A stretch of DNA of 64,000 bases, taken from positions 300,405 through 364,404 of the IMG/VR virus record IMGVR_UViG_3300031787_007614; one strand, 5' to 3'. The notes beneath the pieces are model-generated. The model did not search any database. It saw nothing but the letters and a program-made list of their open reading frames with translations, and was not told the origin of the DNA. How positions within the stretch are numbered: position 1 is the first letter of the stretch; every line of letters starts with the position of its first letter. Both the position numbers and the translations under genes were made by a program. Positions 55,610 to 62,774 of the stretch are shown in pieces.

Positions 55610-56086
55610 TTAGGCAGCTCGTAAACTCTTAAATCTATCTGCCGCGTATGATGCTGCAAATGCTTCTGGCTTCACAAACGGAATCACATTGCATGTTCCT
55701 TTGATGTAGCCCACAGCTTGCGAGATCACACAACTTGAACCGTATTGTTCGTCTGGGTTGATGTCCAAGTGAACTTCAACTTGACGGCCTTCTAGTACGT
55801 CAGCCAGTTTCAAATACAGTTCTGAAACCTTGTACACTTCGGTCATCAAACGCATGGCAGGTTTGCCTGGTTTCACGTCCCACACACGCTCGCGTTGAAC
55901 TTCGCCAAACAGTTTGCAGCCGTTGTTGCCGTTGATGTGTACCACAATGGCCAACACATAGTCGGCATACCAGGTACCGTCAATTTTGATTCGTTCAGAG
56001 TCGCAGCCAAGGTAGATGCGAGTTTCGGGCGTTTGTTTCTGGATAAATTCTGCTACTGATGCTATATCGAGCTTTTTCATTTTCAA
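55610..56086 (-). CDS. RNase H-like YkuK/DUF458 family protein
   Basis: IYLGCDS, RL..EV..., EVHLDIN, KPEAFAASYAAD. Confidence 0.8.
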   Translation of the reverse strand: MKMKKLDIASVAEFIQKQTPETRIYLGCDSERIKIDGTWYADYVLAIVVHINGNNGCKLFGEVQRERVWDVKPGKPAMRLMTEVYKVSELYLKLADVLEGRQVEVHLDINPDEQYGSSCVISQAVGYIKGTCNVIPFVKPEAFAASYAADRFKSLRAA

Positions 56087-56576: not shown

Positions 56577-57350
56577 TTATTGCTTTGCGGCAATCACGCT
56601 TAAATGCCAACCTAGCTGTTGATTGACAGCCTGGCGTTGTGCATCGCTCATGGCAGCAAACCATGGTTCCAACACATAATTTCCTTGTTTGTACTGCTCT
56701 ACATTGTACATAAAACAGTAATCTTGCTTGATGCTTTTGATATCAAAGTGTACGTCCAGCAGTTTTTGTATTTCTCCTTGACTGTAAACTCTGGCATATG
56801 GGCAGTTGTCTTGCGCTTCAAACTGGTCCAGCCCAGACTGAATCATTGCCCATTTCCAACTGTTGCGAGCATACACTAGGAAACGAAACTCCCCATCAGA
56901 TGCTAGACTTGCGTAAGCATTGCTGACCACTTGTTCTACATTGGGATAGTGATGCAATACACCACAAGCATACACCATATCAAATTGTCCTAGCCCTGCA
57001 ACACGCTGACTGTCGCCTGCGTCCATGTGATAGAATTCAGCATCTAATCCCATAACAGTAAATCTCTGCTCACAAAGTTCTATGCTACGACTGCTAAGAT
57101 CAATCCCAACGTATTCAGCACCATGCCGTACAAATTGTTCAGCATCAGATCCAATGCCGCATCCTAGTTCTAGCACCCGCCGTCCCTTGCAGTTTTCAAA
57201 GTCGGCCAACTGCCACAAATGCGGCCCAACAAACCATCTACGACGATTGATGTTGTTCCAAAATTCTTCTGTGCCTTCTGGTGCCAACCCATGCTTTATA
57301 TTACAAGGTTGTTGATCCCAGTACTGTTCTATTTGAGTAATTGTAGCCAT
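56577..57350 (-). CDS. Class I SAM-dependent methyltransferase
   Basis: VLELGCGIGSD, GIDLS, FDMVYACGVLHH. Confidence 0.9.
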   Translation of the reverse strand: MATITQIEQYWDQQPCNIKHGLAPEGTEEFWNNINRRRWFVGPHLWQLADFENCKGRRVLELGCGIGSDAEQFVRHGAEYVGIDLSSRSIELCEQRFTVMGLDAEFYHMDAGDSQRVAGLGQFDMVYACGVLHHYPNVEQVVSNAYASLASDGEFRFLVYARNSWKWAMIQSGLDQFEAQDNCPYARVYSQGEIQKLLDVHFDIKSIKQDYCFMYNVEQYKQGNYVLEPWFAAMSDAQRQAVNQQLGWHLSVIAAKQ

Positions 57351-58892: not shown

Positions 58893-58984
58893 TGGTACCC
58901 CCACCGGGAGTCGAACCCAGATGAACCAATTATCTGTTGCTTACGGGATATAAATCCGCCGTTTTACCATTAAACTATAGGGGC
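58893..58984 (-). tRNA. tRNA-Ile(UAU)-like with 22-nt variable arm
   Basis: Loop TT TAT AT, A31-C39 mismatch, canonical T-arm, CCA; 92 nt. Confidence 0.7.
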
Positions 58985-58989
58985 ATGTC

Positions 58990-59064
58990 TGGGGTGTCGT
59001 ATGAGAATCGAACTCATGACAGCGGAATCACAACCCGCGGTTTTGCCACTAAACTAACGTCACC
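58990..59064 (-). tRNA. tRNA-His(GUG)
   Basis: G-1:C73 encoded; TT GTG AT loop. Confidence 0.92.
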
Positions 59065-59153
59065 ATATAGGAACACACTCAGGCGTAGTAGTTCGTTAGC
59101 CCACTAAGATACACGGCTACCACCCGTGTCATTAGTTGAATGTGTTTTTATAT
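59065..59153 (-). ncRNA. Closing-stem spacer element A
   Basis: 16-nt arms AUAUAAAAACACAUUC / GAGUGUGUUCCUAUAU filling the whole Lys-His spacer. Confidence 0.55.
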
Positions 59154-59288: not shown

Positions 59289-60413
59289 ATGAACAAATAT
59301 TGTCCAAAACCATTTGTTAGTATTCATATGTATACTGATAAAGATCTCAATCCAACTGTTAGGCCTTGTTGCAATTACAAACCTATCAAGCAGTACGCAA
59401 CGATTAATGATTATTTGCAATCATCTGAACTAGCGTCTCTTCAGCAACATTTGCTTACAAAAGAATCATTGCCAGATGGATGCAAGGCATGCAAAGTAGA
59501 CGAAGATAATAACTTGCCTAGTATCCGAAACAAGTATATTAAAGTGTTTGAGCATGAAACCAAAACTAAAATTGTTGACTTGGAAATTTTCCCTGGCAAC
59601 GCATGTAATCTCAGTTGCTTGTCGTGCAATCCTTCTCATAGTACCAAATCAGGTCAGGAATATGCCAAACTTGGATGGATTAAACAATCAATAGTGATCA
59701 ATCACGAAGATCATGCACTTGAAGTTATTAAACAGTTGCCAGACCTTAAATCAATAGGTTTTATTGGCGGCGAATTTTTTGTAACCAAACACAATATTGA
59801 ATTGCTCGATGCGGTTATTGAAAAAAATCTTAAAACACGAATTATTACCAATGCCACTCAACTAACCAAAAAACATCTTGAGCGGTTACAAAAAATATCT
59901 GACCTTGATGTGATGGTTAGTGTAGACGGTACTGGGCCAACATTTGAATTTTTACGCTATCCGGCACAATGGTCAGTTGTGCAATCAAACATTGTTGCAC
60001 TACAACAGGCATTGCCCGGAGCAAAGATACATTTGTCGGCAGTGTTGCAATTTTTAAATTTGCAAAATATCATTGAACTGTTTGAATACGCCAATGTCCG
60101 TCGACTGCCATTTAATGTGATCCCTTTATCTTATCCTGTTTGGCTACAGTCAGAAGTGCTTACCACTCTCGAACGTCAGCAGTTGATTGCAGTTATACAA
60201 AAACAACTAACAGTTGCAAAACTTACCAAAACACAAAAACAGTTAATGACTGATACATGTAGTATGCTAGAAACAATACAGCACTCACCTGCTCAACGAG
60301 AACAGTTTGTGTCTCGAACAAGCCAGCTGATTCGACTGCGCAACATCACACAACACACAATCAACTCAGTGTTTGGTGTGCTAGAAAATTTAGCGCAAGA
60401 AGTTATACAATAG
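59289..60413 (+). CDS. Twitch/SPASM-domain radical SAM protein inserted in the tRNA array
   Basis: CNLSCLSC, GGEF, N-terminal PCC and CKAC; TAAGTA 5 nt upstream. Confidence 0.85.
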   Translation: MNKYCPKPFVSIHMYTDKDLNPTVRPCCNYKPIKQYATINDYLQSSELASLQQHLLTKESLPDGCKACKVDEDNNLPSIRNKYIKVFEHETKTKIVDLEIFPGNACNLSCLSCNPSHSTKSGQEYAKLGWIKQSIVINHEDHALEVIKQLPDLKSIGFIGGEFFVTKHNIELLDAVIEKNLKTRIITNATQLTKKHLERLQKISDLDVMVSVDGTGPTFEFLRYPAQWSVVQSNIVALQQALPGAKIHLSAVLQFLNLQNIIELFEYANVRRLPFNVIPLSYPVWLQSEVLTTLERQQLIAVIQKQLTVAKLTKTQKQLMTDTCSMLETIQHSPAQREQFVSRTSQLIRLRNITQHTINSVFGVLENLAQEVIQ

Positions 60414-60453
60414 CCAGGGACCTAACTCGTCAAGGGAGAGTATGGCTATGTGT

Positions 60454-60531
60454 TGGTACCACCTGAGAGATTCGAACTCCCCGCCCCTGCGTTCGTAGCA
60501 CAGTGCTCTAATCCAAATGAGCTAAGGTGGT
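60454..60531 (-). tRNA. tRNA-Arg(ACG)
   Basis: CTGTG-CT ACG AA-CGCAG; CCA. Confidence 0.92.
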
Positions 60532-60539
60532 GTATTGAA

Positions 60540-60739
60540 TTTGAGAGTAGTAGCATCACTGTTATTGCTACCATTGACCCGTGTAATAAAGCCGGCCGGG
60601 AGGGTGATACGTCACTTGGAATACTTAACACACAGATTGATTACTTAGTTGTGTACGGAATCACGCCGCCCGTGCTTTACACTAGGTTGACCTTCGAAGA
60701 ATCTTCCTAGCGTGTCTTTCTCTTGCTGACACTCTCAAA
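60540..60739 (-). ncRNA. Candidate ~200-nt multibranched RNA
   Basis: Perfect 9-bp terminal stem UUUGAGAGU/ACUCUCAAA enclosing at least six hairpins. Confidence 0.6.
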
Positions 60740-60742
60740 ACT

Positions 60743-60816
60743 TGGTGCCCCACGACAGAATCGAACTGCCATCACAGGATTACAAAACCAGTGTACTACC
60801 ATTGTACTAGTAGGGC
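60743..60816 (-). tRNA. tRNA-Thr(UGU)
   Basis: TT TGT AA loop; weak anticodon stem; CCA. Confidence 0.85.
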
Positions 60817-60822
60817 GAATTG

Positions 60823-60912
60823 TGGTGGAAGACTAGGGAGTCGAACCCTATGACCCTATTACTAGAATCTACAGATTAGCAATCTGCTGCATTACCGTCC
60901 TGCCCGTCTTCC
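60823..60912 (-). tRNA. tRNA-Ser(GCU)
   Basis: Long V arm; TT GCT AA; CCA. Confidence 0.93.
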
Positions 60913-61286: not shown

Positions 61287-61294
61287 ATAATTTT

Positions 61295-61370
61295 AACACA
61301 CTCTTGCGAATGTGTGTATTAAAACATTCTAAACTACTTAGGCTGCCTGTTTGTAAAGAATGTTTTAATA
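61295..61370 (-). ncRNA. Closing-stem elements B and C (tandem)
   Basis: ACACAUUC-GCAA-GAGUGUGU hairpin, and a perfect 14-bp inverted repeat UAUUAAAACAUUCU/AGAAUGUUUUAAUA. Confidence 0.55.
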
Positions 61371-61468
61371 CGCTCGGATTTTTTTATGTACAAGAACATA
61401 AGCCATCCCCGAGGCCGCCCATTTGTAGTTTAGAGTGATACAGGCTCGCGTTGCCGTTGCACTAAATG

Positions 61469-61875: not shown

Positions 61876-62774
61876 TGGCGGACTGAGAATACATCCTAAC
61901 CCAGTAACACCTCGGACATTATTACAAACCTTGCGAGTCTGCTTTCTTCCGATTTCCACTGCAACCATATTGCTATGTATCACAGTCTGTTACCAGTATC
62001 GCCGTTTTTAAAGACAGGCAGTAGTCTTGTCATCACATGCTACTCTACACCATCTATCCCGTTGACCTTTAGAGCCATTCACTGTCGCTAAACAGTTACG
62101 AAACTTCCAGTATAAACAGATTTCACCTTGCGAGTTACGTCTGACTGTATTGCCTTGCGGCTACAGCATTAGATACTTTTCACACATGACCGAGTCAGTC
62201 TTTGCTTTTATGTTAGATAGTGGTTTTGAAGCCACAGCCTATTCCTTAACAGGGAATTGCTCTACGATGAGCTATATCAACCTACTGCGATGTGCTGACT
62301 CAGTTGCTTCATACTCTTTTGGAATACAAAATACAACACACCACGTTCCTTTTGTCTTGCGAACTACTCAGACGTCTTTTGCGATCAGTGTCGGGTCTCG
62401 GCTTTCGCGTACCTCCACCAACCACTCAAACTGCATACGAGCCCTTGGGTGCAACCCCTCGGACCGATACGCTACCCTTTCTCATACCAATTAACTGGGC
62501 TGGTTTTGTATAGAAGTCAGCACCACCTGTTACTTTTCTGCAACTCCGGTTACCCTTGCGGGCCGGTAAGTTACAGCTCTTTCCTATACTCCCAGCGTCA
62601 TTGTTACAACCACCGGTCTTATCAGTGATCGGATCCTCACGGACCTGAGCAGGCTTGTTTACATGAACCATTGCTGGCGGACTTATGTAGGCATACATCC
62701 TTTGGCTGGGTCACCCCAGTTATTCTTCGTACAGCTGGGCGAACCATACTGCACAGGACAATAAACTGCCCTAT
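61876..62774 (-). ncRNA. ~900-nt highly structured ncRNA, GOLLD-like candidate
   Basis: Own consensus promoter, many GCAA/GAAA tetraloop hairpins on the minus strand, long-range complementarities, no credible ORF, heads a phage tRNA array. Confidence 0.65.

What the first reader, a model, noticed from the sequence alone, without database searches (positions are those of the whole stretch)
60540..60739. ~200-nt multibranched RNA between tRNA-Thr and tRNA-Arg
Terminal 9-bp stem, plus internal GUGUC/GACAC, CUAGG/CCUAG, CACG/CGUG, UACACA/UGUGUG, GUGA-CGUA-UCAC and GUAGCA/UGCUAC helices and a longer-range GUGUAA/UUACAC pairing. Not tRNA-, tmRNA- or 6S-like by eye.
Basis: partly seen in the sequence, partly recalled or inferred. 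Interest (0 to 1): 0.6.

Follow-up and report, generated by a model that had tools for sequence, protein, structure and literature searches.

The report
New self-pairing RNA in phage tRNA arrays
The 200-base gap between two tRNA genes of this 364-kb phage encodes a member of a large, previously undescribed family of highly structured non-coding RNAs. The family sits in a "tRNA slot" of phage tRNA arrays and carries a loop that always stays self-complementary, the signature of an RNA that pairs with a second copy of itself.

Summary
Window 60540-60740 (minus strand, the tRNA strand) is one copy of a conserved RNA family about 195-230 nt long. There is one copy per genome in 6 of 6 large phage records. 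The family has no Rfam 15 match, no GenBank phage match, one pattern match in 185,579 prokaryote species genomes, and no paper carrying its motifs.

A covariance model scores the window copy at 156 bits. The comparative structure is 96% paired, against 77% when shuffled and about 40% when slid, and 48 pairs show compensatory changes. A held-out metagenome set repeats this.

Four local helices are contradicted by family covariation, and the long-range pairing is unsupported.

In most copies the RNA starts 1-6 nt (mode 2, usually AG) after an upstream tRNA's encoded CCA, and in about half it ends 6-11 nt (mode 8) before the next tRNA. This points to excision by tRNA-processing nucleases.

The loop closed by helix P8 begins with a perfect palindrome of at least 6 nt in 92 of 93 and 63 of 64 unique copies. 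At least 13 different palindromes occur, which is evidence for a symmetric intermolecular kissing loop of the kind seen in OLE and GOLLD.

The biochemical function is unknown.

The parts
60540..60740 (-). Whole RNA element (201 nt), a member of the new family. It is a full-length match to covariance model R1.
   Evidence: cmsearch gives 156 bits, E 3e-48, model positions 1-214. It is the only copy in the 364-kb genome.
60743..60816 (-). Upstream tRNA-Thr(tgt) with an encoded CCA (60743-60745). A 2-nt AG spacer (60741-60742) separates it from the element.
   Evidence: ARAGORN and Rfam. The CCA-AG junction recurs across the family: 78 of 99 copies start 1-6 nt after a tRNA, with a mode of 2 nt.
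60532..60539 (-). Conserved 3' tail (UUCAAUAC here, family consensus UUCAAUAU). It runs up to the 5' end of the next tRNA.
   Evidence: Flank listing. The next tRNA lies 6-11 nt downstream in 49 of the 99 copies measured, with a mode of 8 nt.
60454..60531 (-). Downstream tRNA-Arg(acg). Its RNase P site would set the 3' end of the element.
   Evidence: ARAGORN and Rfam. The processing step is inferred.
60731..60739 (-). P1 5' strand (UUUGAGAGU). It pairs with 60540-60548.
   Evidence: 99% of cells are paired and 8 of 9 pairs have compensatory changes.
60540..60548 (-). P1 3' strand (ACUCUCAAA).
60727..60730 (-). P2 5' strand (GUCA). It pairs with UGAC at 60611-60614.
   Evidence: 99.7% paired and nearly invariant, with only G.U variants. 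Two compensatory cells appear in the held-out set.
60611..60614 (-). P2 3' strand (UGAC), inside the highly conserved CCAAGUGACGUA motif.
60717..60726 (-). Highly conserved single-stranded segment GCAAGAGAAA.
   Evidence: Identical or differing at one position in nearly all of the 93 unique copies. Its sixth base covaries with a base of the AAGUAU segment (AU 69, UA 16), a candidate tertiary pair.
60714..60716 (-). P3 5' strand (GAC). It pairs with GUU at 60627-60629.
   Evidence: The middle pair is UA in 66 and AU in 25 sequences, and 98% of cells are paired.
60627..60629 (-). P3 3' strand (GUU).
60682..60710 (-). P4 hairpin: CUAGG/CCUAG base, GA/UC and UCU/AGG upper stem, and a UCGA tetraloop at 60694-60697.
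   Evidence: All 11 pairs show compensatory changes. The loop is UCGA in 88 of 93 copies.
60670..60675 (-). P3c 5' strand (GCACGG). It pairs with CUGUGU at 60630-60635.
   Evidence: Compensatory variants in the short subfamilies: CAACG:CGUUG, CAAUG:CAUUG, CACAG:CUGUG, UAGG:CCUA, GAACG:CGUUC.
60630..60635 (-). P3c 3' strand (CUGUGU), directly 5' of the P3 3' strand.
60655..60669 (-). P5 hairpin GCGG[CGUGAUU]CCGU. It corresponds to the T-arm-like hairpin of the family, but the T-loop consensus is lost in this copy.
   Evidence: 4-bp stem, 99% paired and covarying. The 7-nt loop is UUCRAnn in 79 of 93 copies and CGUGAUU in 3.
60636..60654 (-). A-rich 19-nt linker. It replaces the two variable hairpins (P6, mostly GNRA-capped, and P7 with a GG loop) found in the main subfamily.
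   Evidence: Alignments.
60604..60607 (-). Pseudoknot 5' strand (UCAC). It pairs with GUGA at 60556-60559 in the P9 loop.
   Evidence: The family-level pseudoknot is 97% paired and all 3 of its pairs have compensatory changes. The window carries U:A and A:U where the consensus has C:G and G.U.
60556..60559 (-). Pseudoknot 3' strand (GUGA) in the P9 loop.
60597..60600 (-). P8 5' strand (CCCG). It pairs with CGGG at 60578-60581.
   Evidence: 98% paired. The inner two pairs covary (CG/UA; GC/AU/UA).
60578..60581 (-). P8 3' strand (CGGG).
60591..60596 (-). Palindrome GCCGGC at the start of the 15-nt P8 loop. This is the proposed intermolecular (kissing-loop) pairing site.
   Evidence: A perfect palindrome of at least 6 nt sits at this spot in 92 of 93 unique copies and in 63 of 64 held-out copies. 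The innermost 'pair' joins adjacent bases and is standard in 100% of cells.
60566..60571 (-). P9 5' strand (GUAGCA). It pairs with UGCUAC at 60550-60555.
   Evidence: 97% paired and 5 of 6 pairs compensatory.
60550..60555 (-). P9 3' strand (UGCUAC).

Best explanation
Window 60540-60740 (minus strand) encodes a stable, highly structured non-coding RNA of a new family specific to phages.

Shown:
- The RNA belongs to a family with more than 160 distinct copies.
- The family always lies on the tRNA strand inside phage tRNA arrays, with one copy per genome.
- The fold is conserved. A terminal stem P1 closes a junction that holds three parts: a long arm (P2-P3-P3c carrying the P4 hairpin with a UCGA loop and a T-arm-like hairpin P5), a hairpin P8, and a hairpin P9 whose loop forms a pseudoknot with the P2/P8 linker.
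- About 60 junction nucleotides are nearly invariant.
- The P8 loop always begins with a perfect palindrome of 6-8 nt, and its sequence changes freely while staying self-complementary.

Inferred:
1. The RNA is transcribed as part of the polycistronic tRNA precursor and occupies a 'tRNA slot'. Its 5' end is made by the endonuclease that matures the 3' end of the upstream CCA-encoding tRNA. The CCA-AG/UUUU junction fits my recollection of the RNase E preference RN/WUU. Its 3' end is made by RNase P cutting at the next tRNA, followed by trimming.
2. Two copies pair through the palindrome as a symmetric kissing loop or short intermolecular duplex. This would give a homodimer, or a larger assembly if the conserved self-complementary UUCGAA tip of P4 is a second interface.
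3. The folded, self-associated particle acts in trans on some part of the tRNA or translation machinery during infection. The target is not known.
For: Family and structure:
- A homologue in a related phage already shows compensatory changes.
- Pattern scans gave about 120 loci.
- Model R1 finds 98 copies at 93-232 bits in 100 loci. It finds nothing above 16 bits in 0.71 Mb of control phage DNA.
- The structure is 92.8% paired on the structure-blind MAFFT alignment and 96.2% on the model alignment. Shuffled controls give about 77% and slid controls 35-44%. 42-48 pairs have compensatory changes.
- A held-out metagenome set gives 95.7% paired and 41 compensatory pairs.

Strand:
- Abundant G.U pairs, such as UG 70 and GU 63, would be A.C mismatches on the other strand.

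Slot position:
- 78 of 99 copies start 1-6 nt (mode 2) after a tRNA end. CCAAG precedes P1 in most copies. The next tRNA follows 6-11 nt (mode 8) downstream in about half.
- The upstream tRNA varies (Asp 24, Thr 10, Phe 8, Met 7 and others), so the junction is kept, not one particular neighbour.
- No promoter-like or terminator-like site lies between 61290 and 59600 on the minus strand.

Self-pairing:
- Palindromes occur in 92 of 93 copies, with 15 different sequences counting two poorly aligned copies, and in 63 of 64 held-out copies.
- The central tetranucleotide switches among CCGG, UCGA, CGCG, AGCU, CUAG and UGCA.
- 'Pairs' between adjacent bases are standard in 100% of cells. Such pairs cannot form within one strand.
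- Kretsch et al. (PMC12286853) used the same argument for the OLE L9.3 and GOLLD L21a bridges seen by cryo-EM.
- The duplexes are predicted at -5 to -18 kcal/mol, and palindromes with AU-rich centres are mostly 8-mers.

Copy number: one per genome in 6 of 6 records of 229-364 kb.
Against: - No expression or end-mapping data.
- Dimerisation rests on sequence logic alone.
- The palindrome directly abuts the P8 5' strand, an unusual geometry for a kissing loop.
- The P4 UCGA loop hardly varies, so it gives no covariation evidence for a second interface. Three of its five variant loops (UAGA in two copies, UCAA in one) are not self-complementary.
- The homologues were collected with two exact 15-mers from the element, so conservation of those two motifs is overstated.
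- The parsimony count of palindrome switches (at least 36) rests on a tree from a short alignment. The safe lower bound is the number of types minus one.
- The comparative nested structure of the window copy is much less stable in the nearest-neighbour model (-35.9 kcal/mol) than the MFE fold (-57.3 kcal/mol).
- The function is not known, and no linked protein was found.
Confidence: 0.6

Rival explanations
1. A monomeric RNA whose palindrome is read at another level. It could be the binding site of a dimeric protein, on the RNA or on the DNA, or a DNA-level signal. The RNA would then not pair with itself.
For: Palindromic hexamers are classical sites for dimeric DNA-binding proteins. No physical evidence of RNA dimers exists here. 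The palindrome abuts the stem, which is not the usual kissing-loop layout.
Against: A protein site would keep its sequence. Here at least 13 different palindromes replace each other while only self-complementarity is kept. The closing stem P8 covaries as RNA, including G.U pairs. No protein gene is consistently linked; the best candidate occurs in 20 of 115 loci.
Confidence: 0.12
2. A tRNA-elbow mimic or decoy. The T-arm-like hairpin and a GG-containing loop would imitate the tRNA elbow and bind, titrate or recruit a tRNA-binding factor. Candidates are a host anticodon nuclease or other defence protein, a modification enzyme, RNase P or the ribosome.
For: 79 of 93 copies have a 7-nt loop UUCRAnn on a G-C-rich stem, the T-loop consensus. 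The P7 loop carries GG, like a D loop. Loss of P7 goes together with loss of the T-loop consensus in the short subfamilies. The RNA sits among tRNAs. tRNA-modification-type genes (radical SAM, methyltransferase) lie in the same array.
Against: The window copy and its subfamily lack both the T-loop consensus and P7, yet they keep the whole core, so the elbow is peripheral. There is no acceptor end and no anticodon-like arm. ARAGORN and the Rfam tRNA-clan models do not match. This reading is compatible with the best explanation and does not exclude it.
Confidence: 0.12
3. A ribozyme. One version is self-cleaving and cuts at its own 5' edge, freeing the upstream tRNA's 3' end. Another would be some other catalytic RNA that uses the invariant junction core.
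For: About 60 nearly invariant junction nucleotides and a pseudoknot are typical of catalytic or ligand-binding cores. The 5' boundary sits at a fixed distance from the tRNA, with a conserved AG before it.
Against: No Rfam ribozyme model matches at E<=10. Only one tRNA per array would profit, while all other tRNAs are processed without it. Host RNase E and RNase P explain the ends without new chemistry.
Confidence: 0.08
4. A cis-acting element of the tRNA operon with no function as a free RNA. It could be a processing insulator, an attenuator or a folding spacer.
For: It always lies within the transcription unit and is flanked by tRNAs.
Against: It occurs once per genome, while arrays hold 20-30 tRNAs. 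A spacer role does not need 200 nt with a pseudoknot, an invariant core and a self-complementary loop. Its position in the array and its neighbouring tRNAs vary.
Confidence: 0.05
5. Not an RNA gene at all: chance structure in a spacer, a small protein gene, or a MITE-like mobile DNA with terminal inverted repeats.
For: The single-sequence fold z-score is only -2.4. The terminal stem looks like inverted repeats.
Against: Hundreds of homologues carry compensatory changes and strand-specific G.U pairs. No ORF fills the gap; the only ORFs there run into the tRNAs. The terminal stem covaries instead of keeping a transposase site. There is one copy per genome and no target duplication in the flanks.
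Confidence: 0.01

Closest known systems
GOLLD RNA (Rfam RF02032)
   Same: It is encoded by phages in or next to tRNA islands, and a GOLLD copy lies 1.1 kb away in this very array (61880-62344). Its function is unknown. It has a loop whose palindrome covaries, which cryo-EM showed to be a symmetric intermolecular kissing loop (PMC12286853).
   Different: No sequence or model similarity: the GOLLD model does not match the element. This RNA is 200 nt, against about 800 nt for GOLLD. GOLLD also occurs in bacteria and prophages, whereas this family gave one pattern match in 185,579 species genomes and none in GenBank phages. No GOLLD was found in 20 other loci that hold the element, so the two are not obligately linked.
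ROOL RNA and OLE RNA (homo-oligomeric 'ornate' RNAs)
   Same: They are structured RNAs whose quaternary structure is built from kissing loops. ROOL is also found near phage tRNA islands. The OLE L9.3 loop switches between palindromes exactly as the P8 loop does here.
   Different: They are about 580-600 nt long with unrelated folds, and there is no Rfam match here. Oligomerisation of the present RNA is inferred, not seen.
HIV-1 dimerisation initiation site (a mechanistic analogue, from my own knowledge)
   Same: A hairpin loop with a 6-nt GC-rich palindrome that pairs with the same loop of a second molecule.
   Different: That loop is 9 nt, with purines flanking the palindrome. Here the loop is 15-17 nt, the palindrome abuts the 5' strand of the stem, and a conserved U/A-rich 9-mer follows. 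The biology is unrelated.
Phage T4 RNAC and RNAD (species 1 and 2 RNAs)
   Same: They are small stable RNAs transcribed from a phage tRNA region, and their biological roles are unknown (PMC3014915). From my own knowledge, they are co-processed with tRNAs.
   Different: No sequence similarity to any GenBank phage record. The T4 RNAs are shorter (about 120-140 nt, from my own knowledge) and are not known to carry a palindromic loop.
tRNA (T arm and elbow) and tRNA-like modules such as bacterial Y-RNA-like YrlA
   Same: Most family members carry a hairpin with the T-loop consensus and a GG loop. The RNA occupies a tRNA slot, and its ends are probably set by tRNA-processing enzymes.
   Different: There is no cloverleaf, acceptor end or anticodon arm. 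The window copy has lost the T-loop consensus. The phage has no Ro/TROVE gene.

Membership tests
New family defined here (covariance model R1) | A full-length match to the model, covering P1, P2, P3, P4 with the UCGA loop, P5, P8, P9 and the conserved junction motifs | tested here: met
   156 bits, E 3e-48, model positions 1-214. Control phage DNA (0.71 Mb) gives at most 16 bits.
New family defined here (covariance model R1) | A perfect palindrome of at least 6 nt at the start of the P8 loop | tested here: met
   GCCGGC at 60591-60596.
New family defined here (covariance model R1) | A 'tRNA slot': same strand as the array, starting 1-6 nt after an encoded CCA, with the next tRNA about 8 nt downstream | tested here: met
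   2 nt (AG) after the CCA of tRNA-Thr and 8 nt before tRNA-Arg.
New family defined here (covariance model R1) | A pseudoknot between the P2/P8 linker and the P9 loop | tested here: met
   UCAC 60604-60607 pairs with GUGA 60556-60559. The changes are compensatory relative to the consensus CCG:UGG.
tRNA (RF00005) / tmRNA | A cloverleaf, or a tRNA-like domain with an acceptor end, detected by ARAGORN or the Rfam models | tested here: not met
   ARAGORN finds no gene in 60532-60742. No tRNA-clan or tmRNA match inside the element at E<=10.
GOLLD (RF02032) / ROOL | A match to the family covariance model at the gathering score | tested here: not met
   The GOLLD model matches 61880-62344 only. Nothing matches in the element at E<=10 or in the elements of 7 other loci at E<=1.
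GOLLD / ROOL / OLE kind (self-assembling RNAs) | Homo-oligomer formation shown physically | not testable with these tools
   Only the sequence signature, palindrome covariation, could be tested. It is met.
RNase P RNA | The conserved regions CR-I, CR-IV and CR-V forming P4, and a match to the Rfam RNase P models | tested here: not met
   No Rfam match at E<=10. Strings that look similar by eye (AGUCCCGG, CCGGCUU, GUGAAUG) pair differently: CCCG pairs with CGGG (P8), and CCGGCU is only one of many palindromes.
Group I intron, known self-cleaving ribozymes, 6S RNA, SRP RNA, riboswitches in Rfam 15 | A match to the family model | tested here: not met
   cmscan of 60400-60900 against all 4227 families at E<=10 returns only the flanking tRNAs and chance hits of 16 bits or less inside the element.
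Y-RNA-like (YrlA) RNAs | A Ro (TROVE) protein partner, and a Ro-binding terminal stem plus a tRNA-like module | tested here: not met
   No TROVE domain in the 364-kb phage genome, while the control genomes ring. No Rfam Y RNA match. A host-encoded Ro cannot be excluded.
Phage T4 RNAC/RNAD | Sequence homology to the T4 tRNA-region RNAs | tested here: not met
   blastn of the window region and of a consensus-like copy against 50,697 GenBank phage records finds only tRNA matches or nothing.

The most novel reading that the evidence does not exclude
This is a previously undescribed class of phage RNA. After GOLLD and ROOL it would be the third RNA class tied to phage tRNA islands, and by far the smallest. 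It would be cut out of the tRNA precursor like a tRNA and assemble through a symmetric palindromic kissing loop into a dimer or higher-order particle. Its invariant pseudoknotted core would carry out a function not yet known for any RNA, either catalysis or capture of a tRNA/translation or defence factor. It appears confined to uncultivated, mostly large phages. One contig name (TBL_comb48_EPI) suggests a freshwater lake.
Probability: 0.45. Interest if true: 0.85.

Novelty: new variant of a known kind. Interest (0 to 1): 0.72.

Why it matters
Phage tRNA islands are already known to hold two giant RNAs of unknown function, GOLLD and ROOL. Both turned out to be self-assembling cages.

A third family, unrelated in sequence, sits in the same place and carries the same kind of evolutionary signature for RNA-RNA self-pairing. 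This suggests that self-associating RNAs are a recurrent product of these 'RNA operons'.

At about 200 nt the RNA is small enough for quick tests by native gels, mass photometry, crystallography or cryo-EM, and for compensatory-mutation tests. A strong covariance model is now available for it.

The family is abundant in metagenomes but absent from cultured phages, from bacterial genomes and from Rfam. It is therefore a blind spot of current annotation. In this window it would otherwise be left as an empty gap between two tRNAs.

The fixed CCA-AG junction also offers a clean case for asking how non-tRNA RNAs borrow the tRNA-processing machinery.

Tried and rejected
- Rfam 15 at E<=10 on the element, and at E<=1 on seven homologous loci, gave nothing.
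- GenBank phages gave only tRNA hits for the window (blastn) and nothing for a consensus-like copy.
- The literature gave no paper with the motif strings and no description in searches on phage tRNA-island RNAs. The 2023 IMG/VR catalogue of candidate structured RNAs (PMC10690425) lists motifs of at most 151 nt, and its supplements are not held. A partial overlap with one of its unnamed motifs therefore cannot be excluded.
- Linked protein partner: clustering of ORFs within 5 kb of 115 copies gave no family present in more than 20 loci.
- Ro/TROVE and RtcB are absent from the phage genome.
- RNase P resemblance by eye is rejected (see Membership tests).
- The long-range GUGUAA/UUACAC pairing shows no excess complementarity within sequences over between sequences.
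- An obligate link to GOLLD is not supported: none was found in 20 loci scanned, although at least 12 loci resemble the region 5' of the window's GOLLD match.
- The protein-coding, MITE and chance-structure readings are rejected (see Rival explanations).
- The thermodynamic MFE fold agrees with the comparative structure only in P1, P4 and P9.
Full report
**Where it is.** The window is the last 64 kb of a 364,404-bp virus record with direct terminal repeats. From about 55.3 to 61.8 kb it carries 25 tRNA genes, all on the minus strand. A GOLLD RNA lies at 61880-62344 on the same strand. The finding is the 211-nt gap between tRNA-Thr(tgt) 60743-60816 and tRNA-Arg(acg) 60454-60531. Neighbouring tRNAs in this array are otherwise 4-12 nt apart, so a 200-nt gap without an ORF stands out. 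The only ORFs in it run into the tRNAs.

**Relatives.** The neighbouring radical-SAM gene led to a related phage contig (L004). It carries the same element in a different place in its array, after tRNA-Asp. The terminal stem and the last hairpin both show double changes that keep the pairs.
- Two invariant 15-mers from that pairwise alignment were scanned against IMG/VR.
- About half of the hits are chance matches. The other 120 or so loci hold the element by nhmmer, and 86 are distinct full-length copies.
- I built a covariance model (R1) from the MAFFT alignment of these copies, using a structure derived from covariation.
- R1 finds 98 copies at 93-232 bits in 100 loci. It finds nothing above 16 bits in the 86 chance-hit loci, which serve as 0.71 Mb of control phage DNA.
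- The window copy scores 156 bits and is the only copy in its genome.
- Five other phage records of 229-364 kb also hold exactly one copy each.
All 80 loci returned are hit by R1.
- The same pattern found a single 549-bp MAG contig among one genome each of 185,579 prokaryote species.
- blastn found nothing in 50,697 GenBank phage records.
- No paper in the library holds the motif strings, and none describes such an RNA.

**Structure.** On the structure-blind MAFFT alignment my structure is 92.8% paired. Shuffling the 3' partners gives 77.8%, and sliding them gives 35-44%. 42 of 58 pairs show changes on both sides. On the model-fitted alignment the figures are 96.2%, 76.7% and 35-43%, with 48 of 59 pairs compensatory. 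On the held-out metagenome set they are 95.7%, 77.5% and 32-43%, with 41 of 54 compensatory.

The fold, 5' to 3', is as follows.
- P1 is 9 bp.
- P2 (GUCA:UGAC) stacks directly on P1.
- An invariant single strand GCAAGAGAA follows.
- P3 is 3 bp, and its middle pair is UA in 66 sequences and AU in 25.
- The P4 hairpin carries a UCGA loop in 88 of 93 copies.
- A second short helix follows on the same 3' strand as P3. It is UAG:CUG in the main subfamily and P3c in the short ones.
- A hairpin P5 has a 7-nt loop that reads UUCRAnn, the T-loop consensus, in 79 of 93 copies.
- The main subfamily has two variable hairpins, P6 and P7. P6 is mostly GNRA-capped (GGAA in 41 copies). The P7 loop holds GG.
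- The invariant segments AGUAUCCCAAG and GUA come next.
- P8 (CCCN:NGGG) closes a 15-17-nt loop.
- GUGAAUG follows.
- P9 is 6 bp and strongly covarying. Its loop (AUAAnnnUGG) pairs with the CCG just 5' of P8, forming a pseudoknot that is 97% paired with all three pairs compensated.

Frequent G.U pairs fix the strand as that of the tRNAs.

**The window copy.** It belongs to a short subfamily that lacks P6 and P7 and has lost the T-loop consensus (its loop is CGUGAUU). By homology with its nearest relatives, its central part is P3c GCACGG:CUGUGU around the hairpin GCGG[CGUGAUU]CCGU, followed by a 19-nt A-rich linker. P3c is compensated as CACAG:CUGUG, CAACG:CGUUG, CAAUG:CAUUG, UAGG:CCUA, UAGA:UCUA, GAACG:CGUUC and GAAUG:CAUUC in other short copies. 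All helices are mapped to window coordinates.

Four are local alternatives that the family contradicts. The long-range GUGUAA/UUACAC pairing has no support. The thermodynamic MFE fold shares only P1, P4 and P9 with the comparative structure, which scores -35.9 against -57.3 kcal/mol.

**A tRNA slot.**
- In 78 of 99 copies the element starts 1-6 nt after the 3' end of a same-strand tRNA. The mode is 2 nt.
- The apparent 4-nt cases have a P1 that is 2 bp longer.
- Several of the exceptions still have a T-arm-like sequence upstream that ARAGORN missed.
- The junction reads CCA-AG-UUUUG in most copies.
- The 3' side reads CAAA-UUCAAUAU, and in about half of the copies the next tRNA follows 6-11 nt downstream (mode 8).
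- The upstream tRNA differs between phages (Asp 24, Thr 10, Phe 8, Met 7, and 16 further kinds). Selection therefore keeps the junction, not one particular neighbour.
- No promoter-like or terminator-like site separates the element from the six tRNAs upstream or from tRNA-Arg downstream.

From this I infer co-transcription with the tRNAs and release by the tRNA-maturation nucleases. The AG/UUUU junction fits the RNase E preference as I remember it (RN/WUU; my own knowledge, not tested). RNase P at the next tRNA would set the 3' side.

**The palindrome.**
- In 92 of 93 distinct copies the P8 loop begins, directly after the 5' strand of the stem, with a perfect Watson-Crick palindrome of 6 or 8 nt. 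The one exception has a 4-nt palindrome, shifted by one base.
- The palindromes are GCCGGC (30, including the window), CUCGAG (22), UCCGGA (19), CCCGGG (6) and GUCGAC (4). GCAGCUGC, ACCGGU, GCCCGGGC, CUCGCGAG, UAGCUA, GCCUAGGC, GCGCGC and UGUGCACA are rarer.
- In the held-out set 63 of 64 new full-length copies obey the rule. The exception is one base off.
- A hexamer palindrome cannot fold on itself. The inner 'pairs' join neighbouring bases, yet they are standard pairs in 100% of cells (CG 62 / UA 27 / GC 1, and CG 86 / AU 2 / GC 1 / UG 1).
- A protein site would keep its sequence. Here only self-complementarity is kept across at least 12 changes of type, the strict lower bound. Parsimony on a rough tree gives 36.

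Kretsch et al. used this same reasoning to support the symmetric kissing loops OLE L9.3 and GOLLD L21a that they saw by cryo-EM (PMC12286853). I therefore propose that two copies of the RNA pair through this loop. The predicted duplex energies are -5 to -18 kcal/mol, and palindromes with weak centres tend to be 8-mers. The tip of P4 (UUCGAA) is also self-complementary, but it is almost invariant, and three of its five variant loops break the symmetry. A second interface is only a possibility.

**What it does.** This remains open.
- No protein gene is consistently nearby.
- The phage has no Ro or RtcB.
- The T-arm/GG-loop module of the main subfamily looks like a tRNA elbow. It is dispensable for the family core, since the window's subfamily lacks it.
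- The many invariant junction bases and the pseudoknot point to a compact tertiary core of the kind seen in ribozymes and ligand- or protein-binding RNAs.

My best account is a stable, processed, self-pairing ncRNA that acts in trans on the tRNA or translation machinery. The rivals are a monomer with a protein-read palindrome, an elbow decoy, a ribozyme and a purely cis element. They are ranked in Rival explanations.

**Comparison with known systems.** In context and in the self-pairing signature the RNA works like GOLLD, ROOL and OLE. It is not a member of any of them, because the models do not match. It is also four times smaller and appears confined to uncultivated phages. It resembles T4 RNAC and RNAD in being a non-tRNA RNA of a phage tRNA region with an unknown role (PMC3014915), but it shows no sequence similarity to any GenBank phage record, which should include T4.

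**Caveats.**
- The homologues were gathered with exact motifs from the element itself. The family is therefore wider than sampled, and the two motifs look more conserved than they may be.
- Alignments A3 and A4 are fitted to the model.
- The E-values of R1 are rough.
- The 2023 catalogue of IMG/VR structured-RNA candidates (at most 151 nt each) could not be checked for a partial overlap.

**Compliance with the operators' notes.** No alternative genetic code was used. The large protein searches were not used.

Noticed in passing
window 61287-61445 (-): A second conserved, structured, non-Rfam element lies directly 5' of tRNA-Trp. Its fold z-score is -5.06, with 0 of 200 shuffles as good. blastn finds homologous stretches in more than 25 of the related loci. 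A 6-sequence alignment shows compensatory changes in the first hairpin and a 15-bp hairpin, followed by a GC-poor terminal hairpin. There is no Rfam match at E<=1.
   Followed up: partly
window 61880-62344 (-), probably extending to about 62900: A GOLLD RNA (RF02032, 204 bits) has a tRNA-like Rfam match nested inside it at 62211-62281. The 550 nt on its 5' side are 73-86% identical in at least 12 related loci. This may be the less conserved 5' half of GOLLD, which the Rfam model does not cover.
   Followed up: partly
window 59064-59152 (-): The 89-nt spacer between tRNA-Lys and tRNA-His is 96-98% identical in two otherwise diverged phage loci, L210 and L071. It folds with z = -2.7. It has no Rfam match beyond a 22-bit chance-level hit. 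It could be another small RNA or an atypical tRNA-like gene.
   Followed up: partly
window 55610-56086 (-), 56577-57350 (-), 59289-60413 (+): Protein genes are embedded in the tRNA array. They are an RNaseH-like PF04308 protein (its family recurs near the arrays of 16 related loci), a SAM-dependent methyltransferase and a radical SAM protein. They may be RNA-modification or RNA-processing enzymes.
   Followed up: partly
window 58893-58984 (-): ARAGORN calls a 92-nt tRNA-Ile with anticodon UAU. That is unusually long for an Ile tRNA. It may carry an insertion or a long extra arm.
   Followed up: no
L051 3623-3900 (+): A related phage tRNA array holds a circularly permuted tmRNA (RF04321, 97.7 bits).
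   Followed up: no
L255 2355-2506 (-) and 1186-1418 (-): One metagenome contig has a normal but divergent copy of the element (101 bits). About 1 kb away it has a second, weak match (43 bits) without the palindrome. This may be a decayed duplicate or a distant subfamily.
   Followed up: no
L057 and L022, downstream of the element: ARAGORN calls a tRNA with anticodon CUA (labelled Pyl), that is an amber-suppressor-type tRNA, 22 nt after the element in two related phage arrays.
   Followed up: no
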